DNA from: Macrostomum lignano
Lineage: Eukaryota
DNA: 30,924 nt
Assembly (NCBI GenBank): GCA_002269645.1
Contig: NIVC01004935.1
Span: 1-30,924 of the forward strand
Direction: 5' to 3'
Shown here: piece by piece, positions 2,673-20,520 of the stretch
How positions within the stretch are numbered: the first letter of the stretch is position 1
Layout of the letters: each line of letters begins with the position of its first letter
Notes under the pieces: model-generated
Database searches by the model: none
What the model was told of the DNA's origin: nothing
Seen by the model: only the letters and a program-made list of their open reading frames with translations
Translations under genes and position numbers: made by a program

Positions 2673-5441
2673 ATGGAAATCGAAATTAATAGCAAACGGT
2701 GCTCACGAGACACTGACTCGCCGCCGACGGTGTCGACCAAGAAGGTGAACAACCGAGACTCTGCCGGCCCTGTCCGCAGATCCGAACAACGAACCATGCT
2801 GTCTCCGTCAAACGCGCCACTGCCAGAAACTCCACCTGGTACCTCAAAAGGTGAGCTGCCTCCTTCTAAAAGGGGTAGTCTAGAAGTCATGAAAGCTGAA
2901 GGTGTAACAACAATTATTAGACTACCAAAACCAGACAAATCAGACAGCAAATCATACAATCTACCAAATAATTGCAACATTAGTTACCATCCATCGGCTC
3001 TAAAAAATTGCGACAATCAAATTTTGAAAATTCTCGTTGACGAGATTCAGGCGAAAGCCTTTCACCACCACACCAACGGTAGACCGGAAGCCCGGAAAAT
3101 CGTTTGGTTTGGACCAGAGTACACCTATGGTGGTACTAAAATTAGTGCCAATGACAACTGGCATCCCCTTGTCACTAGCCTAGCCACCTGGCTCAGAGTC
3201 GAGTACCAGCTTCCCGTCTTCAACTCATGTTTGATCAATTTCTACAAAGACGGATCGATCAACATCCCCTGGCACTCTGATGACGAGGTAGAGTTAGGGC
3301 CTAACCCGACTATCGCATCCATCTCGATTGGCGCAACGCGCGACTTCCACATGCGCCCCAAAGGCTCAACTAACATCGCATGGTCTCAAAGACTCGCCAG
3401 TGGCTCGCTGCTGGTAATGAGCGGTGCAACACAATCGCACCTTCAACACGCGGTCCTCAAAGACCCCAAAGTCAAAGAGCTCAGAGTCAACCTCACGTTT
3501 AGACTTACGCACGATGCTAGGATCCCGGAAGAACTTCCTGTCTCTGACCAGGCAAATCCTTGTATCCAACCAGTCGACAACAGCATCACTTGCGATCTTG
3601 ATGATGAAGACTCGGTTCGCCGACGGGCAGAGCTGGAAGCGGAAAATTTAAGACGAATTAGATCGCGTTCAAACAGTAGCACGGGGCGCAAACCTAGCAG
3701 TCAGCAGCCAACCACTCAAATATCTCAACAAAACAACATGCAAATTGCTCACGAACAGCAATCAACCATTAGCAAGCACAACTTGCAGCAACAAGCCAGC
3801 ATGCAAATGCAGCCGCAGCAGCCGCCATCTGACAACTCACAGCAAACGCTCATCCACTTGACGCCGCCGACAACAACACAACAGCAACAACAAACTGAAA
3901 CTAAAACAACCTGCAATAGCCAACCTAGCCAAACTAGCCAAAATAATCAGCTAAATCAACCTAAAACTCAAAGCCAAACTAGCCAACTTAGCTCTAATCT
4001 AACCAGCCAACCTAACACTGCAAGCAGCAACTATCAACTAAGAACTAATGACAATTCAAAACCTAAAAACTCAGCTCCAGTCATCTTCGAAATTGAGCAT
4101 GAAGGCAAGGATCCCATAAAATTTGAATGGTTTCTAAAAAACAACTTTCCTGAAATTAGAATTAAATCGGTCAAAGATCTGTACCATAGCTCAGGCTACA
4201 TTGTAACTCGAGAACATCCTAAGGATTACAATAAATTACTAACAGCACCACTTAAAACCAACAAAATTAATGAATTTGAAATTACAAGACGCATGGCAGC
4301 CAAGAGGCCAGTAAAACAAGGGGACGATCAGGTGCGTGCACCTCTTAAATCTCCTCAGGTGTACTGTTTCATTGTCAAGCACGTCCCCATTGCGGTGGAC
4401 GCTAAAGAGTTAGCCAAACACCTGGTAGAGTCAGAGCAGCAAATTCCGATTGATGGCGCCGTGCGCATCATCTATAAGGCAACAGGTGAACCATCACCGC
4501 ATGTTCGCCTCTTCACGAAGAGTAAGGGCGCAATGGAGAGATGCATTGAGCACGGCGTCCATCTAGGCTTCAGCAGGTTCAGGTGCGAGGAGTCGATTAA
4601 TCTTCCACCTGTCAAAGCCATCCAGTGCATGAAGTGCCAAAGATTAGGGCACCATGAGAATAAATGCACTGCGTCAGTATACAGATGTAACAAATGCGCA
4701 GGGGAGCACTTCTCAGCCGACTGCCCCAAGGACCGCAAGTTCGAATGCGCCAACTGCGGGGGCGAGCACCCGCAGTTTTCATTTAAATGTCAAAAAATCA
4801 AGGAAGCAAACGAAATTGCAACTAGAAAAGCACACGAAAAAATCAGAGCACAAAGAGAAGAAGCAAAACAAAAACAAAATCAGAACATCTTTGGTAGTCG
4901 GTCCCTAGGGGAGGCTTTTGGGGTACCAGGACCGCTATCCTACGCTGACGCAATGCGACCAATGCGAACTGGACTCATCAAGCCAATCCTGGGTCCTATC
5001 GCGTATTCCAACCGTGCCGCCGCCGCTGCCGCCGCCGCCGCTGCCTCTGCCGCTAGCGATGCCCCACCAGCCGAAGCGCCGGCGAATCGAACTGCTCTGA
5101 CCAATCCGGCGGCAATCCAAATCTCCGCCAACCCGCCCACGCTGCCGGCAGTTGCCTCCGACTCCGTGGCCGCGCCCAATCTAGGAGTTGAAAACGCCAA
5201 TGACACGCGCAAATCAAGTGAGAGGGGCCTAATCTCCCGGATGGGGGTGCTCGAGGTTGTACTTCAGGCACTCACTCGGCTCATGGGCACTAATCCGGGG
5301 CAGATGCTCACTGAATGGGAAGCGGGGCAACTCGCGATCCAGGCAGTGACTGAAGTCCTGGCAGCACTCAGGAATCGAAGGGGACCTGATTCAGGGACAG
5401 GGGACACCGAAGCCGCGCAAGCGGGCGGAGATGAAACCTGA
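2673..5441 (+). CDS. ORF1p: AlkB-like 2OG-Fe(II) dioxygenase, Q/S/T/N-rich linker, gag-like region with three zinc knuckles
   Basis: Uninterrupted 922-aa ORF. AlkB motifs at ~3060-3503. Knuckles CMKCQRLGHHENKC, CNKCAGEHFSADC and CANCGGEHPQFSFKC (CX2CX4HX4C, CX2CX3HX4C, CX2CX3HX6C) at 4626-4790, the arrangement typical of Jockey/I-group ORF1. Confidence 0.92.
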   Translation: MEIEINSKRCSRDTDSPPTVSTKKVNNRDSAGPVRRSEQRTMLSPSNAPLPETPPGTSKGELPPSKRGSLEVMKAEGVTTIIRLPKPDKSDSKSYNLPNNCNISYHPSALKNCDNQILKILVDEIQAKAFHHHTNGRPEARKIVWFGPEYTYGGTKISANDNWHPLVTSLATWLRVEYQLPVFNSCLINFYKDGSINIPWHSDDEVELGPNPTIASISIGATRDFHMRPKGSTNIAWSQRLASGSLLVMSGATQSHLQHAVLKDPKVKELRVNLTFRLTHDARIPEELPVSDQANPCIQPVDNSITCDLDDEDSVRRRAELEAENLRRIRSRSNSSTGRKPSSQQPTTQISQQNNMQIAHEQQSTISKHNLQQQASMQMQPQQPPSDNSQQTLIHLTPPTTTQQQQQTETKTTCNSQPSQTSQNNQLNQPKTQSQTSQLSSNLTSQPNTASSNYQLRTNDNSKPKNSAPVIFEIEHEGKDPIKFEWFLKNNFPEIRIKSVKDLYHSSGYIVTREHPKDYNKLLTAPLKTNKINEFEITRRMAAKRPVKQGDDQVRAPLKSPQVYCFIVKHVPIAVDAKELAKHLVESEQQIPIDGAVRIIYKATGEPSPHVRLFTKSKGAMERCIEHGVHLGFSRFRCEESINLPPVKAIQCMKCQRLGHHENKCTASVYRCNKCAGEHFSADCPKDRKFECANCGGEHPQFSFKCQKIKEANEIATRKAHEKIRAQREEAKQKQNQNIFGSRSLGEAFGVPGPLSYADAMRPMRTGLIKPILGPIAYSNRAAAAAAAAAASAASDAPPAEAPANRTALTNPAAIQISANPPTLPAVASDSVAAPNLGVENANDTRKSSERGLISRMGVLEVVLQALTRLMGTNPGQMLTEWEAGQLAIQAVTEVLAALRNRRGPDSGTGDTEAAQAGGDET
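3000..3510 (+). other. AlkB family (ALKBH2/ALKBH3-like) dioxygenase domain within ORF1
   Basis: RKIVWFG.EYTYGG...FNSCLINFYKDG..IPWHSDDE.ELG..PTIASISIGATRDF...L.SGSLLVMSG.TQ..LQHAV.K....RVNLTFR. HSD His codon at 3273, distal His at 3447, Arg codons at 3483 and 3501. Confidence 0.93.
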
Positions 5442-5472
5442 ACCTGACAATTAAATTACGTTTAGCGTTAAC

Positions 5473-8105
5473 TTGATATCAAATTTCAACTCATCTAATA
5501 ATTCCCCTGATAATAATGGGCCGGGTAAACAGTCTGTTGTGCGGGACACTCTGAACATTGGACATCTCAACTGCAACGGGCTTAGCAACAAATTCTATGA
5601 GATAATATCCTGGATCAACAAAGAAGACTTAGACATTGGGCTTTTCTCTGAAACATGCCTAGAAGAAAAAAACAAATTTCACTTACCAGGGTACGCCACG
5701 CTCCGGTTTGACGTCCCTAACTGTAGAAGAGGACTTGCAGTTGTCTATAAAAATCATTTAGAAATTATGAATGTTGAAAAAAAATTTTGACAACTGCAAC
5801 CACGAGCTTATCAGTTTTGAAGTTCATCTTAAAAATAACAAACTTAAGCAATTTAACGTGGTCCTCTTCTACAGGAACCCGACTCCAACACGGCTTAACA
5901 CCCAACTTCTTGATCATTTATTCTCTAATCCCTCGACCTTAGTTGTCGGGGACTTTAACTGCAACCACCCAGCCCTCGTGGTGACTCCCAAACTAACTAT
6001 CCTGGCAAGCAGCTGTTTGATAGGCTTGACTCGCATCCAAACCCACCAACCATTCTTAACGATTATGGGGACTGTACCAGAGTCAGCTACCGTAGTGGCT
6101 TAGTCCTTAGGAACGTGCTTGATCTAGGAATTTGTTCCCCGGAGCTAATTAAACATACCAGCAACGTTATTGTGGGAGAAGATCTAGATAGCGACCACCT
6201 CCCCATTATCATTAAAATTTATTTAAATCCTAACTGTAAGCTGAGCAAAAAACCCACTAAAAGCTTTTGGAACACTGACTGGGAAACCTTTAGAGGGACC
6301 CTTCAGGATAAACTTAGCAACCAACAGCTTCTCAGTCGCAGATTATCCACACCTGAGGACCTAGACAAAGCGGTTGATCTGCTAAATCAGTGCATTCATG
6401 ACACCATTGAGGATGTTGTACCCAACCGGGACCCTAGGGAACAGCTTCCCCCAGATATTATTAACAAAATTAAGCATAGGAGGAAACTTAGAAAATTATT
6501 CAAAAAAACTAGAATAGACGACTTCAGGGTTCAAGCCAATCAAGCAGCTAAAGAAATTCGAAATGCTATACGTATGCATAGATATAGGAAATTCGAGGAT
6601 CTATGCCACAAAATTGCTAAAACTAGTTACAAAAAGGAACCCAAAAAATTTTGGATTGACATCAAAAAGATGACAGGAGAAAGGTCCAAAATGATCAACT
6701 ATCCCCTTCTAGTCTACAAAGATTCGCATGCCGAGACTGAGGCAGAAAAAGCTTCATTCTTCAGCGACTTTCTTAAAGATCAAATGCAATCTCACCCCAA
6801 CCACGACTCGCTAATCTATGAAAATGTCAGTAAGTACAAAGATCATGAGATCTTCAAAACCCATAACAATATAATTGCGGCACTTTCATACCATAAAGAG
6901 CACGCGAACCCAGATAATCCAGATAAAGAAGATATCGAAAACGATATCCTTAACATTACTGACCAGGACGTGCTCTGGGAAAGCAGAAAACTTAGGTCAG
7001 GAGGAGCTCCCGGTCCGGATAGAATTCCTAACATGGTTTTAAATATTGTCTCGGCCCAGACTCCATCAGAGCGCTCGCAAAAATTTACAACTCTAGTTTT
7101 CTCATAGGATACTTCCCTAAACAATGGAAAAAGGCCATCATTAAGATGATCCCTAAACCAAACAAATCCAAAAATCTCGTGGAAAGCTATAGACCCATCA
7201 GCCTAACCTCCTGTGTTGGCAAACTTTATGAGAAGATTCTAGCTAGAAACCTTAAGATTATCTTAGAAAACCTAGGAATTATTAATGAGGAACAATGTGC
7301 CTACAGATTCGACCACTGCACATATGACAATATAGTAAGACTCACCGACGATGTGCTGAAAATGCTTCAGTTGAGGCAGTACACGTTGGGGGTCTTCTTA
7401 TCATCAAAGGAGCCTTTGATGGAGTCTGGCTGGACTACCTTAAATATAAAATCTGGAAAAGTAAAATCCCGCACAACATGACACGCATTATAGCAAATTA
7501 TCTGGATGACAGATCTGTGGAGCTGGTGGTTGGCGGAGCCCGGGGCGGGGTCTTTCAGCCGACGGCGGGTGTCCCGCAGGGTGGGGTGCTCTCGCCCCTG
7601 CTCTTCATCATCTTCGCCAGCTCTATTCCTAAGCCCACTGATAGCAAAGTCCGCTTTAGTCAGTTCGCTGACGACTTAGCAGTATGGGCCTCTGCCAGAA
7701 AATCTACCATGTCCGCTAAAAGGCTTAACTCCTACTTTATTGTCCTCAAAAAGTGGCTTGACAATTTGGGCATTGTCATCAATCCCTCCAAAAGCAAAGC
7801 CATTTCCTTTTTCAAAGCTAATGGGAACAAGACAGGTATAGACGATCCTCCAATTAAGCTTGGACAAGACAAAATCAAGTACTATGATTCCGTCACCTTC
7901 CTAGGGATGGTTCTTGACAAACAGTTTAACTTTAGGGCCCATATCGACAAGGTAGCTGGGTCTTCGACAGCCAAAATGGCTGCCCTAGCTAGGATAGCTA
8001 AGAACTCCAGGATTTCGCAACTGGCTCTTCGCCTAATCTATAGATCTTACATTGAAAGCACAATGACTTACGGCGCTCCGGTGCTCATCAATCTACTGGC
8101 TTCCC
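5473..8105 (+). pseudogene. ORF2 of copy 1: APE endonuclease plus reverse transcriptase, four frameshifts, 3'-truncated
   Basis: APE motifs GHLNCNG, LFSET, GDFN, SDHLP. RT motifs YRPISLTSCVGKLYEK, KGAFDGVW, GVPQGGVLSPLLF, QFADD (7664-7675). Frameshifts near 5780, 5978, 7048 and 7400. Confidence 0.92.
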
Positions 8106-8109
8106 TTAA

Positions 8110-8880
8110 GCCAACTGCAGTGGTGAGCACACGTCGTATTCTCACAAATGCCCAGTAGCTATTAGGGCACATCGCCTGGCAACTGAAAGGGAGCGCGAGA
8201 GGGTGCACAGTCTACGACAACAGTACGACTACGACTGCTATCAGCAAAACTTACCAGAAGCCTTTCCGAGGCCGCAACAGTTCTCCTACTCTGCAGCAGC
8301 AAGCCGATCAGCTGTGACAAGCCAACTGCCTCCAATGTACAACGCGTGCCCGGCTGGTCCCCCTGCGGCGGTCTCGGCGATGGCCTCTGCAGCGGTTGAC
8401 CCGGCAACCGAGCCTGCATCCCACCCCGCGGCGGTCCAGGCGATGGCCTCCGCGGAGGTCGTCCCGGTACCTGGCCCCTGCAGTGGCTCAGGCGACAGCC
8501 CCTGCAGCGGTGGCCTCAGGCGCGGGGTCAGCATCGACTGTTAACCAGACCGAGCCGGTGACCTACGGACCGAAGGCGAGTTGGGCCAAACCAAATCATG
8601 CGGCCACCAATTATAACCATACCAAAAACAGTAGCTCAAAAATTTACTCACAAACAGATATTCTCAGGCTGGCCATGAGGGCCTTGAGTAGCATCCTGGA
8701 GATGGGCTCGGGCTTCTCTGCGACGCACAGACTGCGGGGGAACTCGCAGTCCACGTTGTCATTGAGGTCCTGGGCTCACTCTCGGAGCTACAGGGTCAGG
8801 GAGCTGATGGTGGGGCAGCTGCATGGTAAGCTGTTCACCTTCAGGCCCCGAACTACTTGTTACCTGAAACTTAAGAGCGC
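8110..8880 (+). pseudogene. C-terminal remnant of copy 2 ORF1 (last knuckle, Ala/Pro-rich repeats, terminal helix)
   Basis: NCSGEHTSYSHKC...AHRLATERERERVH parallels NCGGEHPQFSFKC...ANEIATRKAHEKIR in copy 1. IYSQTDILRLAMRALSSIL parallels LISRMGVLEVVLQALTRLM. One frameshift in between. Confidence 0.75.
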
Positions 8881-8882
8881 GC

Positions 8883-11760
8883 ATGTCAGTGTGTAACAGT
8901 AACAGTCACAGCTCAGTTACCAAGAATGGTTCGAGGGTAAACAACTGCTCTACTACGCTGAAAGTGGGGCATTTAAACTGTAACACGATTTCAAATAAGC
9001 TGCATGAGGTTATATGGTGGGTTCGAGACGAAAACATTGATATAGGCCTTTTTTCCGAGACGTGTCTGACCAAGGACAATAATTTCTTCATACAGGGATA
9101 CGCCATCCTGAGACTAGACGTTCCAGACTGCAGGCGCGGGCTTGCCATTGCTTACAAGAGTCATCTTATTATTGACGGGGTTAAAAAGTATTTTGATAGT
9201 CAAACTCATGAGTATATCAAGTTTTCAGTGCATCTCCCTGGCAACTCTTTCAGGAAGTTTGATATCACGCTGTTCTATAGGGCCCCCGGGCTCCCCGACT
9301 GTCTTAAGACGGATCTGCTTGAGCAGTGTCTATCCTCCCCATACTCCCTTCTGTTAGGAGATCTCAACTGCAGGCATGGGTTTCTTGGTGGTGATAGTGC
9401 TCAAAATTACCCTGGGAGGCAGCTTTTTGATTGGCTCGATTCGCATGCGGATCCCCCTGTCGTTCTCAACAAGTTCGGGGATTACACGCGGATCTATAAC
9501 CGCTCTGGTAAAAACCTAGGCAATGTGATTGACCTAGCTATGTGCACTAGCAGGCTTGCTCCCTTCTCCAGTGAGGTCTCCGTGGGTGAAGATCTAGACA
9601 GTGACCATCTTCCCATAGTTGTATCTCTGTCCATTGATCCCGCTTGCCACAAGGCAAAGCTCCCGCTCAAAAGCTTCGGGAAGACTGATTGGGAGTCCTT
9701 CAGATTCTCGCTACAGGACAAGCTTGACAACATCAGAATTCTAAAATCTGATATCTCTACCCCTGAAGAGATCGACCAAGTCGTGGACAATCTGTCTTCG
9801 GCTATCACTGACACCATCAATGAGGTGGTCCCTGACAGAGACCCTAGAGAGCAACTCCCACCGGACATAGTTAGAAAAATTAAGCACAGGAGGCATCTTA
9901 GAAAATGCTTCAAGAAGACTAGGGACGATACGTTCAGGATTCTTGCCAATCAGGCGGCCAAAGATATCAGAGTAGCTATCAAGAATCACAGATACAAAAA
10001 GTATGAAGATAGCCAAAAATAGTTATCGTCACGAACCACGTCGCTTCTGGGAAGACGTGAAAAAGATGACTGGCGAAGCCAAGAAAAGGATAATCTACCC
10101 TACACTGAAGCATAATGACGCCACTGCAGAAACAGAGGCTGAAAAAGCGAACCTTTTCAGATATTTTCTTGACTACCAAATGCAACCCAAGCCTAAGCCT
10201 GGGACTGAGTACTATAACAAAGTCATCAATGCTCGATCGCGAGAAATCTTCAAGCCCCATGAGGGGATCTTTCAGGCTCTGTCCTACTTTAGAGAAAACC
10301 AGGCTGTTGAGGGCAACAATCAAGAAGTGTCTGAGGCTGACCTTCTTGAGATCATAAACATAGATGTTACAATGGCTATAAGCAGTCTTCGGCTCGGGGG
10401 AGCCCCAGGCCCCGATAAGATCCCCAATGTCGTCCTCAAGAAGGGCCTGAGCCCCAACTCCATCAGGGTGCTTACTAAGCTGTTCAATACTTGCTCCCTG
10501 CTTGGGTACTTTCCCAAAGCCTGGAAAAAGGGAATCATAAAGATGATTCCCAAACCCGACAAACCCAAAGGTCAAATTGACAGCTACCGCCCCATCTGCC
10601 TAACTTCCTGCTTAGGAAAATTATATGAAAAAATACTCGCTAGAAACTTTCGAACCATTCTTGAAAACCGTAACATTATTAGTTCCGATCAATGTGCATA
10701 TCGCCAAGATCACTGCACCTTTGACAACATAGTCAGGATCACAGATGACGTTCTAAAAATGCTGCAGCTTGGGCAATACACCCTTGGTGTCTTTTTTGAT
10801 GTTAAGGGCGCCTTTGACGGCGTTTGGCATGACTCGCTACGCCTTGATCTTCTCGACAGTGATCTTCCTCACAGCCTCATGAGGTCCATTTCTAGCTACC
10901 TTGACGACAGAGAAGTGCTGGTCCAGGTTGGGGGGGGGGGGCTGAGTGAGAGCCTCAACCCGGCGGCAGGTGTTCCCCAGGGAGGTGTCCTCTCGCCGCT
11001 CCTCTTCCTGGTTTATGTCAACAAAATTCCGCTTCCTGCTGACAGAAAGGTTCGCATTAGTCAGTACGCAGATGACCTGGCCGTTTGGGCCAGCGCCAGA
11101 ACTTCATCACTTTCTGCTAAGCTGCTAAATGCCTACTTCAAGAAGCTCAAAATCTGGTTAGACGAGGTTGGGATAATTATCAACCCAAATAAGAGCAAAG
11201 CAATTTCTTTTTTCAAGCCCTTGGGCAATCACCGGACAGGACCTGATAGGCCCCCCTTGCTGCTTGGCAATCAGTCCATTCCTTACTATGACTCTGTGCG
11301 TTTTCTAGGAATTATCCTTGATAAACAGCTCACCTATAAACCTCATCTCATCAAGGTAATTAATTCTGCGCAGAACAAGCTCCTTGCGCTGCAGCGCCTT
11401 GCTAGTAATACCAAAATCTCCCAGCAGGGGCTTAGACTGATTTATAGGATGTATATTGAGAGCTGCATAATTTATGGCGCTCCAGTCTTGATACACCTCA
11501 AGGATGCTCAACTCAACAAGTTGCAGCTGCTACAGAACAAAGCGCTGAGAACGTCACTAGACGCTCCACTGTGCACTAAAATTAGTTACTTACACTACAT
11601 CACCAAAATGCCGATGATCAAAGAGCGCATTTGGAATCTAGCCAAGCGCTGGTACAGAAACACCGAGATGTCTGGAGTACACAACTTCGACCTAGACACC
11701 AAGAAATGGGATAGGAGAGGGTTCAGGATGCCTGCAGTGGCCCGTCTGAGAAATGTCTAA
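8883..11760 (+). pseudogene. ORF2 of copy 2: APE plus RT, single frameshift near 10005-10020, no RNase H
   Basis: ORFs 8883-10022 and 10003-11760. Motifs GHLNCN, LFSET, GDLN, SDHLP, DVKGAFDGVW, GVPQGGVLSP, QYADD (11065-11076). Ends KKWDRRGFRMPAVARLRNV* with no RNase H motifs. Confidence 0.95.
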
Positions 11761-12721
11761 TGTGGCACCCATGCTGTGCTTAGGTTCAACTGTGAGCAGT
11801 ATTGTCAAACAAGAGCAATTATTGAATAAAACCTAACAAACTCTTGATGTAATTGTAAAAAAAAATGAAATGTCAAATAAATCTGTGATAAAATTTTTTT
11901 TACACCAGAAAATATTCATGACAATACATGTATACAATTTTATTGTACAACTAACAATTATTTCATTTTATGCCAATATTCCAAATATTTAATGCCAATA
12001 TGCCAAATATTCAATATACAATAACACTGACGCAACTTTGCCTATACCCCTCGCCTCTTTGTGCTCTGCTTCATCTTCTGTCTCTCTCCCGACTTTGAAC
12101 TGTACATGTTTTAATCATCTCTACTGTTTTAATTTGTTTTTACATCTCCTCACAATTTCCTTTTTCGATTTGTTCTAATGCCTTCGTTCTCTTCATCTTC
12201 GATTCACCTTAGTCAGATTTGTTTTATTGCTTCGATTGCTACTTTATATATTATCTGATGCACTGTTTTATTTGTTTTATTTTATGCACTTTTTAACAAA
12301 ATATTGAAATCGAATGTCAATAAAAACTCGATAACCTACAAATACATTGTGCGTAAGAGCCGAAAAGGCTGCAGCGCCGGGCCTATTTAAGCCCAAATAC
12401 TCAACAATGAATGAATGAATGTTGTTTTCCTTTATTCCGTACCTGCTCAACTTGCTTGCTTAACACCGCCTGCTCTACATTGCCTGCTCTACATCTCCTG
12501 GTGCTCTCCGGCTCTACTGCAGCATCGCACTACGTGCAGGTCCTACATCGGTCTTTATCTGCAGCGGCGTCAGCGGCTACGCACTGCGTGCTGGTCCTAC
12601 TTCTTGGTGGCGGCGGCGGCTCGGTGGCTTGGCTCGGTGGCGGCGCCGTCGGCTCGTGCGAGACAGCGGCTTTTAGCGCCAGACTTAACGCTTTCAAAGA
12701 TGCTTGACTGCTTGACTGCTT

Positions 12722-14778
12722 GATCATCAAAGATGTCCTCCCGCAAGCCTTTCACCATCTAACTAATGGTAGACCAGAAAAAAAGAAAAATTGTCTGGTA
12801 CGGCCCGGCATACACCTATTCCGGTGGTAGTCTGGAAGCCAATGAGGCCTGGTACCCGGAGTTAACCAAGCTAGTTACCTGGCTCCACGTCGAACTTGGG
12901 CTACCACTGTTCAACTCCGGCCTAGTAAATTTTTACGAATCGGGGCATGTTAACATCCCCTGGCACGCTGATGACGAGACCGAACTTGGCCCCAATCCGA
13001 CAATAGCCTCTATTTCGCTGGGAGCTACAAGAGAATTAGCCATTAGATTAGATCCAAGCAGTCCAAAAACATTGTTTTTAAGCAACCTCTCGAGTCTGGC
13101 AGTTTGTTGGTAATGAGTGGTGCACTCAGAAATATTTTGAGCACAGCATCTACAAAGACCCTAAAGTAAAAGACATTCGCGTTAATCTCACCTTTCGAAT
13201 GACTTCTGAAAATCTGGTCTCCGAGTCTCCAGCGCCCTCGTTGAACCCTTGCGTTCGCCAGTCGCAGGATCTCATCACTCCCACTGATGATCAGCCAGTC
13301 ATCTCTTGCGACCTTGATGACCAAGACTCTATTCGTAGAAAAGCTGAAGAAGAGCGAGTCAACCTAGAGAAAATCAGAAGGGCTAGCCAATCCAGCATTA
13401 AATCCAGCGCCAACAATAGCCAGTCCAGGCAGACCAAATCTGCACCAGTCATCTTCGAAGTCGCCCTGGAAGGAAATGATCCAATATAGTTTGAGTGGCT
13501 GCTAAAGACTAATTTCCGTAACGTAAGAATCAAATCAGTTAAAGATCTGTGCCACTCACCTGGCTACATTGTCCATCCTGAGCATCCCAGGGACTTCAAT
13601 ACGCTCTTAACAGCTCCAATGAAAATCAGCTCAATTAATGACTTTGAAGTCACCAGGCGCACTGCTGCTAAGAGACCTGTCCACCAAGCTAATGACCAGC
13701 CGAGGGTTCGAGCCCCCCTCAAATCTCCGAACGTTCTCTCCTTCATTGTCCGTAACGTTCCGCTAGCGGTCGACGTAAGCGGTCTAGCCAAGCACCTAAA
13801 TGACTCTGACCAGCAACTCTCAATAGATGGAGCAGTTAGAATTATCTCCAAACAGACTGGCCAGCCGACTCCCTTCGTAAGGCTATTCACCAAGTGCCAA
13901 AGAGTAGTAGATAGCTGCATCCAACAGGGTATCTACCTAGGATTTGTGAAATATAGATGCGAAGAATCTAATAGTCTCCCGCCCGTCAGAGCTATCCAGT
14001 GCAAGCGGTGCTCAGGACTCGGTCACCATGAGGCGCGCTGCACAGCAAACTATAGGTGCAACAAATGCGCTGGCAATCATTTCTCAATGGATTGCCCCAA
14101 AGACCAAGTCTTCAAGTGTGCAAATTGCGGCGAAAACCATCCGGCATTCTCATTCAAATGCTCTAAAGTCCGAGAGGCTAACGAATTGGCAACCCGCAAA
14201 GAACATGACCGAATCCGAAAGCAACAACAACAGCTGAGAGCCCATAAGCCAGAAAACAGCCAGACCCTTGGGGAAACCTTCGGCGTCCCTGGGCCAATCT
14301 CCTACGCAGATGCCATGCGTCCGCAGCCGGTTCTCGGGCCAATAGCCTTCTCTAACCGAGCTGCCAAAGCTGCCGAAGCCCAACGAGCATCATTCCCCGC
14401 CTCATCTGCCAATGCTGCCGCCGCCGCCTCAGTCGCCTCAGCCAACCAGAATGCTCTGTCTGATGCAATCAACACATTTGAGCCGCCAACAACTGCTCCA
14501 GCCAATCCGGTCATGATGCATCCAGGAGTTGAATCAACTAACCAAATAGGACCAAGTGAGAGGGGCTTTTTCTCTCGGGAAGATGTGCTCGATGTAGTGT
14601 TACAGGCGCTCGACCGACTCATGAACATTGAACAAGGACGGATGTTCACATCCTGGGAGGCGGGGCAATCGTCTTCCGGGTGGTGTCTGAAGTCGTTAGG
14701 GTGTTCAGGTGTCAAAGAGGGCCTGTTGCTGAGTCAGGGGACACCAAAGTCGTGCAAGCGAACGGAGGTGAAACCTGA
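12722..14778 (+). pseudogene. ORF1 of copy 3: AlkB domain, short linker, triple zinc knuckle
   Basis: AFHHLTNGRPE-KRKIVWYG...IPWHADDE (His 12964)...SGSLLVMSGA-TQKYFEHSI (His 13142)...RVNLTFR. Several frameshifts and a stop at 13487-13489. Knuckles CKRCSGLGHHEARC, CNKCAGNHFSMDC, CANCGENHPAFSFKC. Ends GGET* like GDET* of copy 1. Confidence 0.9.
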
Positions 14779-14867
14779 ACTCTCTTTCTATAGTCTGCTT
14801 AGCTCTGCTCTATTAATTCAACTCTCCTCGTAATACTTCTACGACTAAGACTAAAAGTCACTCTGTT

Positions 14868-17206
14868 GTGCGGGACTCCCTCATTATTGGACACCTGAAC
14901 TGCAACGGGCTCAGCAACAAAATCTATGAGATAATCTCGTGGCTAAAAAATGAGGACTTAGACATAGGACTTTTCTCTGAAACTGGCTTAGTTGACACAA
15001 ACCCTTTCTTTGTCCAAGACTACGCCATCCTTAGATTTGATAAACCTCACTGTAGAAGAGGCCTCGCAGTTGCTTACAAAAATAATCTAAACATTATGAA
15101 TGTCAAAAAGTATTTTGATAACAGTAACCATGAGTTTATTAGCTTTGAGGTTTTCTTAAAGCATAATAGGCTAAACAAACTTAATATAGTCCTCTTCTAC
15201 AGGGCGCCTAACCCTACCAAGCTAAACTGCGACATTCTAAAAAATCTTTTCACAAATTCCTCCACTTTGGTTATAGGGGACTTCAACTGTAACCACTCTG
15301 CCCTAGGTGGAGACACAAATTACAATTACCCCGGCAGACAGCTCTTTGACTGGCTTGAAAACCACCCCAACCCCCTATTTTATTAAATAACTATGGTGAA
15401 TTCAGCAGAGTGTGTAATCGTGGCGGCTCCCACACCGCTAATGAGCTGGACTTGGGGCTTTGCTCCCCCAATCTTGGTCCTCACACTAGTGAGGTTCCCA
15501 TAGGTGATGACATGGATAGTGACACTTTCCCATCATCATAAAAGTTTACCTTGACCCAAACTGTAAAATTTCGAACCCCCCCCCTAAAAGCTTCTGGAGC
15601 ACTGATTGGGAAACCTTCAGGGCTGTTCTCCAGGACAAACTCAGTGATAAACTAATCAACTATCTCAGGTTGGCCACTCCAGCTGAATTAGATAGGGCTG
15701 TAGACCTGCTAACCCAGGGCTTGCACGACACGATTGAGGAGGTGATCCCAAACAGAGATCCCGCGGACAACTCCCCCAGACATAATAGCAAAAATTAAAC
15801 ACAGGAGGAAACTTAGAAAACTCTTTAGAAACACCCGGATTGACCATTTTATGATTCAGGCGAATCAAGCCGCTAAGGAGATCAGGCTCGCCATCCGTAT
15901 GCATAGATATAGGAAGTTTGAAAAGTTATGCAAAAAAATTTCCAAAACCAGCTACCGAAATGAACCAAAATTTTTTGGATTGATATAAAAAAATGACGGG
16001 GGAAGGTCCTAAACCGATCTCGTACCCCCCAATCGTTCTCAAGGATTCTGTTGCTGAAACTGAAGCTGAGAAAGCACAGGCCTTCAAGGAGTTCCTTGAG
16101 GCTCAGATGCGTCCCTGTCCAGACAGATCCTCCCAGCTCTATAAGAGAATTGAGGCCCAAAAAGATCATGAGATCTACAAACCCCATAACATCTTAGCTG
16201 CGTTAACCTATCATAAAGACCATGCCGATCCTGATAATCCAGACAAAAAAGACATTGAAGCTGATATTCTCAACATCATAGATCAGGATGTTCTTTGGGA
16301 GAGTAGGAAGCTCAGGGCAGGAGGGGCTCCCGGGCCTGACAAGATTCCGAACATTGTCCTCAAATTTGGCCTGAGTCCAGACTCCATCAGAGTCCTTGCA
16401 AAGATCTTTAATGCTAGCTTCCTCCTTGGATACTTCCCAAGCGATGGAAAATGGCTACTGTCAAAATGATACCCAAACCAAATAAACCTAAAAACCTCAT
16501 TGATAGCTATAGGCCTATCAGCCTTACCTCTTGTTTAGGCAAGCTTTATGAAAAAACTTAGCATGTCTGCTAAAATACTCAATGACTACTTTATCCGACT
16601 CAAAAGGTGGCTTGATGCCGTTGGCATTACTATTAATCCCTCTAAAAGTAAAGCAATCTCCTTCTTTAAGGCAAATGGCAACAAAACAGGCCCGGGTGAA
16701 CCCCTGATCAAACTCGGGAACAACATAATTAGTTATTATGACACTGTCACCTTTCTTGGAATGGTCCTAGACAAACAACTCAACTACAAATCTCATATTA
16801 ACAAGGTCGTTGGTTCTACCACAAATAAGGTTGCTGCGTTAGCCAGAATGGCAAAAAGAATCTCCCAGCACGGACTAGGACTGATCTACAGGTCTTTCAT
16901 TGAAAGTACCATCACTTACGGTGCTCCCATCCTTCTTAATCTTCCCGACTTCCAAGTCAACAGAATTCAGGTACTCTAAAACAAGGCTCTGCGCATCTCC
17001 CTTGATGCTCCGCCTTACATAAAAAACTCTTACATCCACTTGGTCACCAACATGCCCATGATCAAATATCGCTACTTAGCCTAGGGAAAAATGGTTCAAA
17101 AAGCGTTAGTGGTATTCACAAATTCAAAGATGACACCAAAGAATGGTTGAGACCCGGCTTTCGAGTCCCGGTCACAGCTGCGCTCAGGAAAAAACTTAAT
17201 GCCTAA
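14868..17206 (+). pseudogene. ORF2 of copy 3: APE plus RT with many frameshifts and an internal deletion of the RT core
   Basis: APE motifs GHLNCNG, LFSET, GDFN. After GKLYEK (~16555) it jumps to LSMSAKILNDYF, skipping KGAFD, PQG and YADD. C-terminus EWLRPGFRVPVTAALRKK aligns with copy 2. Confidence 0.9.
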
Positions 17207-18185
17207 TTTATAGCCAGATTCCTGGCTATAAAACAAATATTGTGCTTTTCAGTTGGAGTTTGGTCTGTCGACCCTCTTCCCTTTGTATAATTGCAATTTT
17301 TTGCCGTATGACGGAACGGCTCCCGAAGTTATCGCCTGCCTTCCAAGGGGTACTAGCATTGGCTAGGCTGCATAGCCCTCTCTATCCACAGCTCCCTCAG
17401 GCGGGGACGTTTTAAACCTGGAACCCCAAACCAGGTGGACCAAAAGGCCCTTAACTCTGACTGAGTGAGCTGTTATTCACCCCGTAGGGTCCAGTTAGCT
17501 ATTTATACGGACAAAGTTTGACTCGACTAGTTTGATTAGGATTTGACATTATATATTGATTATTCCTTGGAATAATTGATTAAAATATAGACACGAGCAC
17601 CTCTCTCCGGGAGAGAATCCAACCTTTACTGCAGGCGTATTCTAATTGATGACTAAGTATTAATCCAATGCAATTATTTTTGTATTCAAATTATTAAGAC
17701 ATCATATTTTTTAAAAATATTGCCAACTGTTTTACCTCATTTTTTCCAATATTGCTAAAAAACTTTTAATTTTGTCCAATATTGCTCAAATATTTTCTTT
17801 GTGTTTTATTCTTTGTTTTTAATCCTAAATTTATAAAAAAATGATCGTTTTAGTTTATTTCTCAAACTCTCAAATTCTTGTTTTACACTTGACCTCATCT
17901 TTTGTTCCTTTTTATACTAGTATTATTTGTTAATAGCTACCCCAAATATTTGTTTTATGTAAATACTCCTCGATTTTATTTTTTTCCTAAATTGGACGAC
18001 TATAACTTCTAATAATTCGAACATACGCGTAAAAATATAAAGTTGCGCAAGAGGCCTTCAAAGGGCTGAGGCGCAGGGCAACATTATATTAGCCCCTACT
18101 TATTAAAGTAAAAAAAGTAAAAGTTGTTTTCATTTATTAATTTTGGCTTTATTTTGTCAACACTTAGTACTAGCATCAATCTGCA

Positions 18186-20520
18186 ATGGAAGTAGAAGTC
18201 AATAGCAAAAGATGTGCCTCTAGAGACACTGACTCGCCGCCAGTCAGCACCAAGAAGGCCAACAACCGGTCCTCCTTCGGTCCAGACCAGAGGTCCTGTT
18301 CTGCGTCCTCCAGCAATGCGCCGACTTGTGTGCAACAGCAGACAGTGACTGAAGAACTTCATGTGGCCAGCGATGGTGAGAGCCAGCCTGTCAAGAGTAG
18401 TAAACTAGCAGACTTAGGAAAAGCAACTAAAATATTGATACTCAGTCTACCAGAACCAGACCTCACAGATGACAAAACTGGCCAGCCTTTAACTAACTGC
18501 AAAATTAGATATCTGCCAAATGCGCTCAAATCTTCTGAAGCCAAGCTAAATAAAATTTTAATGGAAGACATTTATCCAAACTCATTCCACCATCTAACCA
18601 AGGGCAAGCCTGAGGCCAGGAAAATAGTTTGGTATGGGCTTGAGTACACCTACGGGGGTACTAAGATTGAGTGCAACGACGCTTGGCACCCAGTCGTCAC
18701 TCACTTAGCCATTTGGCTTCACGTCGAGCTTAGATTGCCACTAGCTAATTCGTGCCTGATCAACTTTTATAAAGATGGATCGGTAGCCATCCCATGGCAC
18801 TCTGACAACGAACCAGAGTTAGGCCACGACCCGACCATTGTGTCGGTGTCGCTGGGAGCTCAGCGAGACTTCCAGCTTAGGACTAAGGGCCAGAGCCAGA
18901 ATATAGTCTACTCGCAGAGGCTTGCCAGTGGTAGCATCACGATAATGAGTGGGCTACGCAACGGTTCTTGCAACACTCAATCACAAAGGACCTCAAAGTT
19001 AAGGAACCTCGAATTAATTTAACATTCAGAGTCACTAGTGATAACAGAATCTTCGACTCACCAGCTTCTTAGCCTGGCAATCCTTGCATCCAGCTTCCTG
19101 AAGAGGCCATCACCTGCGACCTCGATGACGCAGAGTCTGTACGCCGTATGGCCAGGCAGGAGGCTGAAAACATTAGCAAAATTAGATCACGTTCCAGCAG
19201 TAACTCGAGGCGAAAAGCTAAATCCGACCAAACAGACCAAACTCAACCAGCCAATCAGCGGTCTCAAGCAACCACTCAGCAATCTAAACCTAACACTCAG
19301 CAGTCAGAATCTCAGAAGGTAGCTACTCAGCAGTCAAAGCCAAACACTCAGCAGCCAAACGCAGCCAATCAGCACACACAATCAGGCACTCAGCAACATT
19401 CGTCAAACACTCAGCAGAATCATGCAGCCAATCGGCACTCACAATCAGGCACGCAACAATCACTAGCAGCCACTCAGCCAGGCACTCAGCAGTCAAAATC
19501 AGTTACTCAGCAGTCACAACCAGTCACTCAGCAGTCACCACCAGGCTTACAGCAAACACAACGAGAGACGCAGCAGACACAATCAACCAACCAATAAACT
19601 AATTTTGCAAACCAGACTCGACAGCCAGCTACGGCTAGCACTGTGAATTCCGTGCAGTCAACTAAACCTAAGCATCCAGACACTCAGCAATCAAGCACCC
19701 ACACTCAGCAGCCTAATAGCTACCATCTGCCAGCAACTCAGCAATCAACCACTCGCACTCAGCAGCCAAGCACTCGCACTCAGCAGCCAAGCACTCACAC
19801 TCAGCAGCCACAAGCACGCACTCAGCAGTCAAACTCACAACAATCTAATAATTCTAAATTAACTAAAATTACGCCAGTTGTATTTGAGATGCCCTTTGAG
19901 GCCAAGAATCATATTAAATTAAAACATTAAAAAAAATTAACTTTCCTAACACTTGCATCGTGTCAGTAAAAGAGCTGTATCATAGCTCAAGATACTACGT
20001 ATTTACTAATTCTCCACACGACATGAACAACTTATTGACAACAACACTAAAAGTTAACGAAATTAATGGGCACACTGTCACTAGGCGCCTGCCTCAGGCC
20101 AACCGACACCTCTCATCAGGATGTTTACAAAGTCAAGGGCAACTTACGACACCTGCCTGGAGAACGGCATAAAGCTTGGGCACTGAAATTCCGGTGCGAA
20201 GAACCGCACAACCTTCCACCGGTCAAGGAGATTCAGTGCCACAGGTGTCAAGGCCTTGGACACACCGAAAGCAGGTGCAACGCCGGTTTTGTGTGCAACG
20301 TGTGCCGGGACGCACTATTCCGGCGACTGCCCCAAAGATACGGGCTTTAAGTGCGCTAATTGTGGGGGTGAAAACCCGGCGTTCTCCTTCAAATGCCCAA
20401 AGGTTCAGCATGCAAATGAGAGGCGACTGAAAAAGAGCATCATAGGATTCAAGCTTTAAGACTTAAATTCGAACAGACAAGAAAATTAGAACCTACTCAA
20501 ACACTAGCTGATGTAGTGAG
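18186..20520 (+). pseudogene. ORF1 of copy 4 with AlkB domain
   Basis: N-terminus MEVEVNSKRCASRDTDSPPVSTKK matches copy 1. IPWHSDNE (His 18798), frameshift near 18952, then ATQRFLQHSI (His 18974)...RINLTFR (19010-19030). Stops at 19070 and 19595. Knuckles CHRCQGLGHTESRC, CNVC-GTHYSGDC, CANCGGENPAFSFKC. Confidence 0.9.
19260..19845 (+). repeat. Degenerate coding repeat of ACTCAGCA(G) encoding TQQ units
   Basis: Many copies of cactcagcag/cactcagcaa; translation is dominated by TQQS/TQQP. Confidence 0.85.

What the first reader, a model, noticed from the sequence alone, without database searches (positions are those of the whole stretch)
3060..19030. AlkB module is conserved in three divergent family members, consistent with purifying selection
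Copies 1, 3 and 4 all place AlkB at the same ORF1 position and retain the metal triad and both arginines: HSD/HAD/HSD; QHAV/EHSI/QHSI; RVNLTFR/RVNLTFR/RINLTFR. Their DNA differs at many synonymous positions and the adjoining linkers are unalignable. This argues for an old, functionally maintained part of a retrotransposon lineage rather than a one-off capture of a host gene.
Basis: partly seen in the sequence, partly recalled or inferred. Interest (0 to 1): 0.82.

Follow-up and report, generated by a model that had tools for sequence, protein, structure and literature searches.

The report
Flatworm LINE retrotransposons carrying an AlkB demethylase
A lineage of jumping genes (non-LTR retrotransposons) in the flatworm Macrostomum lignano has an ALKBH3-like nucleic-acid demethylase built into its RNA-binding protein and has kept it intact over long evolutionary time, which suggests these elements clean methyl groups off their own RNA or DNA intermediates.

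Summary
The window holds four head-to-tail copies of divergent families of one APE+RT non-LTR retrotransposon lineage; closest database proteins are Macrostomum lignano. Copies 1, 3 and 4 have an AlkB domain (Pfam 2OG-FeII_Oxy_2, E 1e-27) upstream of the linker, RRM-like and 3xCCHC parts of ORF1, with the quoted HxD / H / RxNLTFR motifs. Copy 2 is 5'-truncated, but its family also has AlkB (P0122).

Between copies the AlkB domain is 57-65% identical in protein. Synonymous sites are saturated (pS 0.74-0.84, pN 0.24-0.30; pN/pS 0.30-0.40, intervals exclude 1).

The same AlkB-ORF1-ORF2 layout occurs elsewhere in the M. lignano genome and in four intact families from an unidentified organism. There AlkB has the lowest dN of the ORF1 domains (omega about 0.12 in the one pair where dS was estimable).

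The window AlkBs form one clade (97-98% bootstrap), apart from a putative host ALKBH3-like gene. The predicted fold matches human ALKBH3/ALKBH2 (TM 0.8), not ALKBH5.

The likely role, inferred only, is removal of RT-blocking m1A/m3C from element RNA or cDNA. I found no published AlkB-bearing LINE.

The parts
2104..8100 (+). Copy 1 of the AlkB-bearing non-LTR retrotransposon: full 5' end, truncated at the 3' end at the junction with copy 2
   Evidence: The 5' motif GTTGTTTTCCTTTATT lies at 2104; it occurs only 3 times in the window against 0.06 expected. ORF1 and ORF2 were mapped by tblastn. The junction was read.
2673..5441 (+). Copy 1 ORF1, intact, 922 aa: N-terminal leader, AlkB, conserved post-AlkB segment, Q-rich linker, RRM-like region, 3x CCHC knuckles, C-terminal tail
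   Evidence: ORF list. It is 99% identical to M. lignano UniRef protein P0121.
2955..3527 (+). Copy 1 AlkB (ALKBH3-like Fe(II)/2OG dioxygenase) domain, aa ~95-285. Key residues: N189/Y191, H201 (3273-3275), D203 (3279-3281), H259 (3447-3449), R271 (3483-3485), R277 (3501-3503)
   Evidence: Pfam PF13532 E 1.1e-27. PDB sequence search gives ALKBH3 at 2e-26. AF2 model pLDDT 89; Foldseek TM 0.77-0.80 to ALKBH3. Motif alignment.
3513..3680 (+). Conserved post-AlkB segment (aa 281-336; NPC...ITCDLDDEDSVRRRAELEAENL)
   Evidence: 48-60% identical between copies, pN/pS 0.33-0.43. Also present in P0122.
3681..4046 (+). Q/S/T-rich low-complexity linker (aa 337-458), not alignable between families
   Evidence: pN/pS about 0.9-1.0 on whatever aligns. 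No tblastn match between copies.
4047..4832 (+). RRM-like region plus three CCHC zinc knuckles of ORF1 (aa 459-720)
   Evidence: 58% identical to copy 3. CX2CX4HX4C motifs are read directly in the translation. Related ORF1s hit Pfam zf-CCHC.
5548..8095 (+). Copy 1 ORF2 (APE endonuclease + reverse transcriptase). Frameshifts near 7040 and 7400; ends at RT residue ~499 of 585
   Evidence: tblastn with copy-2 ORF2.
8160..11870 (+). Copy 2, 5'-truncated inside ORF1 so no AlkB is present here. ORF1 tail, then ORF2 8883-11760 with one frameshift near 10003-10022. The 3' end is approximate
   Evidence: Its ORF1 tail matches P0122 along the stretch read at the junction, and P0122 begins 'MRINLTFR', the end of an AlkB domain.
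12421..17200 (+). Copy 3, a decayed copy: 5' motif at 12421, ORF1 remainder 13415-14833, ORF2 14832-17188 with several frameshifts and an internal RT deletion
12720..13198 (+). Copy 3 AlkB domain. At least 3 frameshifts (frame 3 12720-12788, frame 1 12784-13047, frame 3 13047-13120, frame 2 from 13121). HAD at 12964-12972; RVNLTFR ends at 13198. The N-terminal ~119 codons are absent
   Evidence: tblastn alignments; domain-level codon alignment.
18123..20500 (+). Copy 4, a decayed and 3'-truncated copy: 5' motif at 18123, ATG at 18186, degraded ORF1 RRM/CCHC part 19850-20438 with several frameshifts, no ORF2
18486..19030 (+). Copy 4 AlkB domain. H of HSD at 18798-18800; one frameshift at 18953; RINLTFR ends at 19030; stop codon soon after
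   Evidence: tblastn. Pfam E 4e-20 on the first part..
20520..27000 (+). Ty3/Gypsy-type LTR retrotransposon (gag, CCHC, RT, RNase H, integrase) abutting the end of copy 4. Context only; not part of the AlkB elements
   Evidence: Pfam RVT_1 4e-32, RT_RNaseH 4e-35, rve 2e-16.

Best explanation
**What is shown.** The window carries four head-to-tail members of divergent families of one lineage of APE-type non-LTR (LINE) retrotransposons; its closest database proteins are from the flatworm Macrostomum lignano. In this lineage the first reading frame encodes a fusion protein. It has a short leader and a complete ALKBH3/ALKBH2-type AlkB Fe(II)/2-oxoglutarate dioxygenase. A short conserved segment, a disordered Q-rich linker and then the usual LINE ORF1 nucleic-acid-binding part (RRM-like region plus three CCHC knuckles) follow. 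The AlkB module has been retained under purifying selection about as strong as that on the RNA-binding part, and all catalytic residues are kept.

**What the trees support.** The module was most likely acquired once, before the families diverged, and then passed down with ORF1.

**What is inferred.** ORF1 proteins of LINEs coat the element's own RNA. The fused AlkB is therefore held on the template and probably removes 1-methyladenine, 3-methylcytosine and similar Watson-Crick-face methyl adducts from single-stranded RNA, and possibly from the first-strand cDNA. These lesions stop or derail reverse transcriptases. Removing them would raise the yield of full-length, faithful copies. This parallels the AlkB domains in the replicases of some plant RNA viruses.
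For: **Domain identity.**
- Pfam 2OG-FeII_Oxy_2, E 1e-27.
- Best solved-structure relatives by sequence are human ALKBH3 (96 bits) and ALKBH2 (70 bits); E. coli AlkB is not found at E<0.01.
- AF2 model: pLDDT 89, pTM 0.88.
- Foldseek TM-scores: 0.77-0.80 to ALKBH3/ALKBH2, 0.60 to E. coli AlkB, 0.57 to ALKBH5.
- NxY, HxD, H and RxNxTxR are conserved in every element copy.

**LINE context.** APE and RT domains lie downstream in copies 1-3. The same holds in M. lignano locus L011 and in the intact 9-kb contig L001.

**Selection.**
- Window copies: pN 0.24-0.30, pS 0.74-0.84, pN/pS 0.30-0.40, intervals exclude 1.
- Intact pairs: AlkB omega 0.12, or the lowest pN of all ORF1 domains.

**Single lineage.**
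- Window AlkB clade 97-98%.
- AlkB-bearing ORF1s are monophyletic at 78% against AlkB-less ORF1 relatives, with the same four subgroups in both trees.
- Shared signatures are RK(I/V)xW(F/Y)GP, NFY, and loss of the Trp before the second His.
- The putative host ALKBH3-like P0134/P0272 lies outside.

**Recent activity.** Intact 922-aa ORF1; M. lignano proteins are 87-99% identical.

**Mechanism.** From established knowledge: ALKBH3 demethylates m1A/m3C in ssDNA and RNA; m1A/m3C block reverse transcription, which is why AlkB treatment is used in tRNA sequencing; LINE ORF1 proteins bind their own RNA in cis.
Against: - No enzymatic, expression or retrotransposition data exist; the substrate is inferred from fold and family only.
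- ALKBH2- and ALKBH3-type preferences (dsDNA versus ssDNA/RNA) cannot be separated from the model; TM-scores are about equal.
- Synonymous sites are saturated, so omega is approximate. Two of the three window copies are pseudogenes.
- Bootstrap for one clade of all retroelement AlkBs is weak (21-24%), so more than one acquisition is not formally excluded.
- Within the window group, AlkB and the ORF1 C-terminal part give conflicting sister pairs.
- The origin of the module (host ALKBH3, bacterium or virus) is unresolved. Bacterial AlkBs score slightly higher (117 bits) than vertebrate ALKBH3 (about 96-100 bits).
Confidence: 0.6

Rival explanations
1. Epitranscriptomic counter-defence. The AlkB domain erases regulatory methyl marks (m6A or m1A) that the host deposits on element transcripts. 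This would change their stability, export, translation or silencing, rather than repairing RT-blocking damage. It is the idea proposed for the AlkB ORF of orchid Ty3/Gypsy elements.
For: The orchid Gypsy-encoded AlkB protein demethylates m6A RNA in vitro (PMC9289625). m6A writers and erasers modulate L1 retrotransposition in mammals (PMC7873242, abstract listed). Fusion to an RNA-binding ORF1 fits any RNA substrate.
Against: The fold and sequence are of the ALKBH3/ALKBH2 type (TM 0.8), not the ALKBH5/FTO m6A-eraser type (TM 0.57). Whether M. lignano marks transposon RNA with m6A or m1A was not examined.
Confidence: 0.25
2. DNA-directed role. The domain acts on single-stranded DNA at the integration site or on the first-strand cDNA, or removes DNA base methylation at target sites, to assist target-primed reverse transcription or second-strand synthesis.
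For: ALKBH3 and ALKBH2 are DNA repair enzymes. The best structural matches are ALKBH3 bound to ssDNA and ALKBH2 bound to dsDNA.
Against: The domain is fused to the RNA-binding ORF1 protein, not to the ORF2 endonuclease/RT that works on DNA. Nothing in the sequence shows DNA targeting.
Confidence: 0.1
3. The AlkB segments are recent or repeated captures of a host (or bacterial) alkB gene by individual copies and are not functionally maintained. The motif retention would simply reflect youth.
For: LINEs can transduce or fuse with host sequence. Bootstrap support for a single clade of all retroelement AlkBs is weak (21-24%).
Against: - Synonymous sites between copies are saturated while the protein is 57-65% identical.
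- The same architecture occurs in at least 4 window families, in further M. lignano loci and in 4 intact families in another organism.
- The window AlkBs form a 97-98% clade that excludes the putative host ALKBH3-like gene.
- The element AlkBs share derived signatures.
Confidence: 0.03
4. The AlkB-ORF1 fusion proteins are domesticated host genes derived from a retrotransposon gag-like ORF, not parts of mobile elements.
For: Several are annotated as ordinary M. lignano proteins ('Fe2OG dioxygenase domain-containing protein').
Against: Each examined locus has an APE+RT ORF2 immediately downstream. There are many divergent, frameshifted and 5'-truncated copies, a shared 5'-terminal motif, and head-to-tail clusters (window, L011).
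Confidence: 0.03

Closest known systems
Human ALKBH3 (and ALKBH2), the AlkB-family Fe(II)/2-oxoglutarate dioxygenases that repair 1-methyladenine and 3-methylcytosine
   Same: It is the best match by sequence among solved structures (2e-26) and the best match by fold (TM 0.77-0.80). The metal triad, the 2OG-binding arginines and the NxY motif are the same.
   Different: Here the domain is the N-terminal module of a LINE ORF1 protein rather than a free-standing cellular enzyme. It carries lineage-specific changes: RKIVW instead of PRLTxW, NFY instead of NLY, and no Trp before the second His. It falls outside the putative host ALKBH3-like gene P0134 in the tree. Activity is untested.
AlkB domains in replicase polyproteins of plant RNA viruses (Flexiviridae sensu lato, some Closteroviridae and Potyviridae)
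   Same: An AlkB dioxygenase is embedded in the replication machinery of a selfish RNA-templated replicator. The proposed role, keeping the RNA template free of methyl lesions, is the same. The fold is similar (TM about 0.6-0.65 to grapevine virus replicase domains).
   Different: The viral domains belong to RNA viruses of plants with an RdRp; this is a reverse-transcribing nuclear element of an animal. Here the domain sits in the RNA-chaperone protein, not the polymerase. The fold is closer to ALKBH3 than to the plant-virus domains.
AlkB (ALKBH5-like) extra ORF of Phalaenopsis orchid Ty3/Gypsy LTR retrotransposons (PMC9289625)
   Same: It is a retrotransposon-encoded AlkB-family dioxygenase, interpreted as a tool against host control through RNA methylation.
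   Different: The orchid case is an LTR retrotransposon of plants, with a separate additional ORF, described as ALKBH5-like and as a recent acquisition in one genus. The present case is a non-LTR element of animals, fused in-frame to ORF1, ALKBH3-like, and old (saturated synonymous sites; several families; a second organism).
Non-LTR retrotransposons with gag-like ORF1 (RRM + CCHC knuckles) and APE+RT ORF2, i.e. the Jockey/I/R1/LOA-type group of clades
   Same: ORF1 has an RRM-like region and three CCHC knuckles. ORF2 has APE and RT and no RNase H. One copy is 5'-truncated.
   Different: To my knowledge none of these clades is described with a dioxygenase domain in ORF1. The RT is only about 30-35% identical to its nearest relatives outside the family, so clade assignment was not achieved.

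Membership tests
AlkB family of Fe(II)/2-oxoglutarate dioxygenases (Pfam PF13532) | Significant match to the family profile above the curated threshold | tested here: met
   Copy 1 scores 97.9 bits against a cutoff of 31.2, E 1.1e-27. Copy 4 scores 73.3 bits. P0125 scores 107.7 bits.
AlkB family of Fe(II)/2-oxoglutarate dioxygenases (Pfam PF13532) | HxD...H iron-binding triad and RxNxTxR 2-oxoglutarate-binding arginines | tested here: met
   H201, D203, H259, R271 and R277 in copy 1. The equivalent residues are present in copies 3 and 4 and in all related element proteins.
AlkB family of Fe(II)/2-oxoglutarate dioxygenases (Pfam PF13532) | Double-stranded beta-helix fold with an N-terminal nucleotide-recognition extension | tested here: met
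   AF2 model pLDDT 89, pTM 0.88. It aligns over about 200 columns to ALKBH3/ALKBH2 with TM 0.77-0.80. This is a prediction, not a solved structure.
AlkB family of Fe(II)/2-oxoglutarate dioxygenases (Pfam PF13532) | Oxidative demethylase activity on nucleic acid | not testable with these tools
   Needs a biochemical assay.
ALKBH5/FTO-type m6A RNA demethylases | Closest sequence and fold relationship to ALKBH5 or FTO | tested here: not met
   No ALKBH5 or FTO hit in the PDB sequence search at E<0.01. Foldseek TM is 0.53-0.62 to ALKBH5 against 0.8 to ALKBH3.
APE-type non-LTR (LINE) retrotransposon | ORF2 with an apurinic-endonuclease-like domain followed by a reverse transcriptase | tested here: met
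   Exo_endo_phos_2/Exo_endo_phos and RVT_1 in copy 2. The homologous regions are present in copies 1 and 3 and intact in L001.
APE-type non-LTR (LINE) retrotransposon | No LTRs; variable 5' truncation; 3' poly(A) or simple-repeat tail and target-site duplications | tested here: inconclusive
   Copy 2 is 5'-truncated, and copies 1, 3 and 4 share a 5'-terminal 16-mer. The 3' ends and target-site duplications could not be defined. The copies abut one another or other repeats.
APE-type non-LTR (LINE) retrotransposon | ORF1 nucleic-acid-binding protein (RRM-like and/or CCHC knuckles) | tested here: met
   Three CX2CX4HX4C motifs are read in the translations. Pfam zf-CCHC is significant in related ORF1s P0130 (2e-8) and P0132 (2e-5), but weak in P0125 (0.014). 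The RRM fold itself was not modelled.
Jockey clade (or any named LINE clade) | RT phylogeny placing the element inside the clade with reference members | not tested
   No reference RT set was available. The nearest outside hits are 30-35% identical and mostly unnamed.

The most novel reading that the evidence does not exclude
There exists a retroelement-specific clade of AlkB demethylases, distinct from cellular ALKBH1-8/FTO. It has been carried for a long time by animal LINEs. It also appears in an ORF directly upstream of a Penelope-like (RT + GIY-YIG) element in another organism. It moves between element families by recombination, and it is required for efficient reverse transcription or for escape from RNA-methylation-based host control. 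If so, nucleic-acid methylation would be a general, previously unrecognised barrier to retrotransposition in animals.
Probability: 0.3. Interest if true: 0.85.

Novelty: new variant of a known kind. Interest (0 to 1): 0.72.

Why it matters
LINE ORF1 proteins are normally thought of as RNA chaperones without enzymatic activity, and accessory enzymes in LINEs are rare. This lineage has kept a nucleic-acid demethylase fused to ORF1 under strong constraint. That implies methylated bases in the RNA template (or cDNA) are a real cost to retrotransposition in vivo, whether they arise from chemical damage or from host marking.

It gives a directly testable system, because M. lignano has transgenesis (PMC5730564), for asking whether m1A/m3C or regulatory RNA methylation limits retroelements. 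It also extends to animal retrotransposons a strategy known from plant RNA viruses and from one orchid LTR element.

On the practical side, several M. lignano proteins annotated as 'Fe2OG dioxygenase domain-containing protein' are LINE ORF1 fragments.

Tried and rejected
**Searches that found nothing or could not be used.**
- Exact-protein look-ups of P0001, P0002 and the window ORF1 to fetch more genomic copies: nothing on record. dN/dS for the closest (87-99% identical) copies was therefore impossible.
- Identifying the organism behind Logan runs SRR31628392-437 and SRR19193851: no paper cites them. There is no nucleotide similarity to the window or to M. lignano locus L011. The cluster look-ups gave no names.
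- Checking whether those runs belonged to the M. lignano heat-stress RNA-seq study: that study deposited under E-MTAB-14939, so no.
- Five literature searches for an AlkB- or dioxygenase-bearing non-LTR element: none found.
- Rfam and tRNA scans of the window: nothing.

**Analyses that were corrected or left unresolved.**
- The first automatic codon map mis-assigned copy 4 after its frameshift, giving inflated pN for aa 252-336. It was redone with explicit frames.
- LINE clade assignment from the names of RT homologues: hits were too distant and mostly unnamed.
- Origin of the module by score ranking: bacterial, algal and vertebrate ALKBH3-type proteins are intermixed at 95-117 bits, and the NJ sister group is not supported.

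**Explanations considered and rejected.**
- The c1+c4 grouping in the AlkB tree as a long-branch artefact of decayed copy 3: copy 3 is not farther from the outgroups than copies 1 and 4.
- A telomere-like array as the explanation for the head-to-tail order: copy 1 is truncated at its 3' end, which does not fit, and nothing else supports it.


Full report
**What is in the window.**
- The sequence is eukaryotic and repeat-rich. On the + strand, between about 2.1 and 20.5 kb, lie four head-to-tail members of one lineage of non-LTR retrotransposons.
- Copy 1 (2104 to ~8100) has an intact 922-aa ORF1 (2673-5441). Its APE+RT ORF2 has two frameshifts and is cut off at RT residue ~499.
- Copy 2 (~8160 to ~11870) is 5'-truncated inside ORF1 and has a nearly intact ORF2 (8883-11760).
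- Copy 3 (12421 to ~17200) and copy 4 (18123 to ~20500) are decayed.
- A 16-nt motif, GTTGTTTTCMTTTATT, occurs exactly three times (2104, 12421, 18123; 0.06 expected by chance) and marks the 5' ends of copies 1, 3 and 4.
- Copies are only 64-70% identical in DNA, so they represent different families, not recent duplicates.
- A Ty3/Gypsy-type LTR retrotransposon follows from ~20.5 kb.
- The closest proteins in public databases are from Macrostomum lignano (87-99% identity: P0121, P0001, P0002). The window therefore most likely comes from that flatworm or a very close relative.

**Checking the observation.**
- tblastn of copy-1 ORF1 against the window recovers the AlkB region in copies 1, 3 and 4.
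- Pfam confirms a 2OG-FeII_Oxy_2 (AlkB) domain: E 1.1e-27 in copy 1 and 4e-20 in the first part of copy 4.
- In all three copies the domain lies 5' of the linker and of the RRM-like/CCHC part of ORF1.
  - Copy 3's AlkB has at least three frameshifts and lacks the leader and start codon. Copy 4 has one frameshift (18953) and a stop shortly after the domain.
  - The flanks are not wholly unalignable. About 55 residues after AlkB (NPC...CDLDDxxSxRRxAxxExxNL) and the N-terminal leader of copies 1 and 4 are conserved. Only the Q/S/T-rich stretch (copy 1 aa ~337-458) is not.
- Copy 2 has no AlkB here because of 5' truncation. Its ORF1 tail, as read at the junction, matches database protein P0122, which starts 'MRINLTFRLTKDDR', the end of an AlkB domain. 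All four families in the window therefore belong to AlkB-bearing lineages.

**Selection in the window copies.**
- I built domain-level codon alignments, using explicit frames for the frameshifted copies, and applied Nei-Gojobori counting with bootstrap over codons.
- For AlkB (aa 95-280), protein identity is 57-65%. Codon-position identity is about 0.64-0.71 / 0.76-0.80 / 0.34-0.40.
- pN is 0.24-0.30 and pS is 0.74-0.84. pN/pS is 0.30-0.40, with 95% intervals between 0.22 and 0.50.
- Synonymous sites are saturated. dS cannot be estimated, and the true omega is lower than pN/pS.
- The RRM-like and CCHC regions give pN/pS of 0.27 for copies 1 and 3. The Q-rich linker gives 0.9-1.0.

**Selection in intact elements from elsewhere.**
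- These pairs have undergone no pseudogene decay.
- For P0123/P0124, AlkB has omega 0.12. RRM gives 0.16, CCHC 0.16, linker 0.37 and tail 0.40.
- For P0125/P0126, AlkB has the lowest pN of all ORF1 domains (0.24).

**Distribution.**
- A HMMER scan of 1.84 billion representative proteins with the whole ORF1 found further proteins that match both the AlkB part and the RRM/CCHC part.
  - P0123-P0126 (757-962 aa, 34-37% identical) come from Logan assemblies of SRA runs SRR31628392-437.
  - P0127/P0268/P0157/P0280 come from the M. lignano genome.
- Contig L001 (9079 bp) carries an intact AlkB-ORF1 (843 aa), a 123-aa ORF, and an intact 948-aa APE+RT ORF2.
- M. lignano locus L011 (GCA_002269645.1, NIVC01002892.1) carries a full AlkB-ORF1/EN/RT element, followed head-to-tail by a second copy.
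- More distant ORF1 relatives (P0130, P0132, P0184, P0227, P0249) have the RRM/CCHC part but no AlkB.
- I could not identify the organism behind the Logan runs.

**Phylogeny.**
- I built a neighbour-joining tree of 265 AlkB domains. These were the element copies, the 150 best representatives, the 120 best word-search hits, a human ALKBH3 fragment, and a putative host ALKBH3-like gene of M. lignano (P0134/P0272).
- It places all retroelement AlkBs in one clade. Support for that wide clade is only 21-24%.
- The clade of the window copies plus P0001/P0002 has 97-98% support.
- P0134 joins the elements in only 2% of replicates.
- All element AlkBs share changes absent from host, vertebrate, algal and bacterial sequences: RK(I/V)xW(F/Y)GP instead of PRLxxW; NFY/NYY instead of NLY; and L/F/Y instead of W two residues before the second His.
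- The RRM/CCHC tree recovers AlkB-bearing ORF1s as monophyletic against the AlkB-less ones (78%). It shows the same four subgroups as the AlkB tree, three of them at 100%.
- The second refutation criterion (AlkBs grouping with separate host paralogues) is also not met, and a single old acquisition is the best reading.
- One conflict remains inside the window group.
  - AlkB groups copy 1 with copy 4 (93%). RRM/CCHC groups copy 1 with copy 3 (98%).
  - Copy 3 is not a long branch.
  - Exchange of 5' modules between families is therefore plausible but not proven.

**What kind of AlkB.**
- Among solved structures the best sequence matches are human ALKBH3 (2e-26) and ALKBH2 (1.5e-18). E. coli AlkB, ALKBH5 and FTO are not found at E<0.01.
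- An AlphaFold2 model of aa 85-300 is confident (pLDDT 89, pTM 0.88).
- It superposes on ALKBH3 and ALKBH2 with TM 0.77-0.80. The values are 0.60 for E. coli AlkB and 0.53-0.62 for ALKBH5.
- Viral AlkBs also match. Giant-virus AlkBs give up to 0.79 and plant-virus replicase domains about 0.6-0.65.
- In the big protein searches, the nearest non-element proteins are ~200-aa bacterial AlkBs (up to 117 bits). These are intermixed with vertebrate ALKBH3, an algal protein and the M. lignano host-like gene at 95-104 bits. The donor of the module is therefore unresolved.

**How it most likely works.**
- Shown: the domain has every residue needed for Fe(II) and 2-oxoglutarate binding. It has an ALKBH3/2-type predicted fold. 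It is translated as one polypeptide with the nucleic-acid-binding ORF1 protein. It is under purifying selection.
- Inferred from established knowledge:
  - LINE ORF1 proteins coat the RNA that encodes them.
  - ALKBH3 removes 1-methyladenine and 3-methylcytosine from single-stranded DNA and RNA.
  - These adducts block or corrupt reverse transcription.
- The most economical model is that the fused AlkB keeps the element's RNA template, and perhaps the nascent cDNA, free of such lesions. I give this about 0.45.
- The main rival is erasure of regulatory RNA methylation as counter-defence (about 0.25). That is the role proposed for the orchid Gypsy AlkB (PMC9289625). The ALKBH3-type rather than ALKBH5-type fold argues against m6A as the main substrate.
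- A DNA-directed role is possible (about 0.1).
- Recent or repeated capture without function, and domesticated host genes, are each very unlikely.

**Comparison with what is known.**
- AlkB domains are known in replicases of plant RNA viruses and as an extra ORF in orchid Ty3/Gypsy elements (PMC9289625).
- Five full-text searches found no report of an AlkB or other dioxygenase domain in a non-LTR retrotransposon. Repbase reports and subscription journals are not covered by that library.
- I therefore class this as a new variant of a known kind: an ordinary APE+RT LINE with a gag-like ORF1 that has gained and kept an enzymatic module new to that class.
- The LINE clade could not be named. The RT is only 30-35% identical to its nearest outside relatives.

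**Limits.**
- dS is saturated in all comparisons.
- The trees are NJ on a domain of ~180 columns.
- Only three AlkB copies come from the window itself.
- The second organism is unidentified.
- No expression or activity data exist.

**Confidence.** About 0.9 that AlkB is an old, selectively maintained part of this LINE lineage. About 0.45 for the specific repair mechanism. The single figure of 0.6 for the best explanation combines the two.

Noticed in passing
window 2104-20500; L011 8000-16600: The four divergent family members lie head-to-tail in the same orientation within 18 kb. The independent M. lignano locus L011 likewise has two AlkB-LINE copies head-to-tail. The ~200 nt upstream of the 5' motif of copies 3 and 4 are also similar to each other, with a TATA-like box about 40 nt before the motif. 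This suggests either insertion next to resident copies or a shared upstream promoter unit.
   Followed up: partly
L012 3134-7083 (Logan SRR19193851): An AlkB-containing ORF (P0129; 1012-aa variant P0269) lies directly upstream of, and in the same orientation as, an ORF with weak RVT_1 and GIY-YIG matches. That is the hallmark pair of Penelope-like elements. Its AlkB carries the same signatures as the LINE AlkBs (RKxxWYGP, NFY) and joins them in the NJ point tree.
   Followed up: partly
window 2955-3527 / 12720-13198 / 18486-19030 versus 4047-4832 / 13415-14200 / 19850-20438: The AlkB tree groups copy 1 with copy 4 (93% bootstrap), whereas the RRM/CCHC part of the same ORF1 groups copy 1 with copy 3 (98%). 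Copy 3 is not a long branch. This may reflect recombination (module exchange) between families.
   Followed up: partly
window 3513-3680, 13199-13396, 19031-19171: A short conserved segment follows the AlkB domain (NPC...CDLDD(E/Q/A)xS(V/I)RRxAxxExxNL). It is present in copies 1, 3 and 4 and in P0122, and is under constraint (pN/pS 0.33-0.43). Its function is unknown.
   Followed up: partly
L001 4346-4717; L002 3167-3538; L005 3269-3643; L006 3177-3551: In the P0125/P0126 families of the unidentified organism, a 123-124-aa ORF with no Pfam match sits between ORF1 and ORF2.
   Followed up: no
database proteins P0001, P0002, P0121, P0127, P0268, P0157, P0280 (M. lignano): Several M. lignano proteins annotated as hypothetical or 'Fe2OG dioxygenase domain-containing protein' are whole or partial ORF1 products of these LINEs rather than cellular genes.
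   Followed up: partly
window 20899-21053: A 72-bp unit repeated 2.2 times lies just upstream of a TATAAATA box, at the start of the Ty3/Gypsy-type element. Each unit contains TGACGTCA (CRE-like) and CTAAAAATAG. No matching 3' LTR was found in the window.
   Followed up: no
window 28940-29164 and 30287-30924: Two tandem arrays: a 44-bp unit in about 5 copies, and a 50-bp unit (higher-order 100/150/221 bp) that runs to the end of the window.
   Followed up: no
window 657-1271 and 28010-28528: A 204-aa ORF has no Pfam match. A 172-aa ORF has a sub-threshold BEN-domain match (E 0.0045). Neither was examined further.
   Followed up: no
window 2280-2410 and 12560-12660: The 5' UTRs of copies 1 and 3 share a GC-rich GGCGGCTCGG-type repeat. 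Copy 4, whose UTR is only about 60 nt, lacks it.
   Followed up: no
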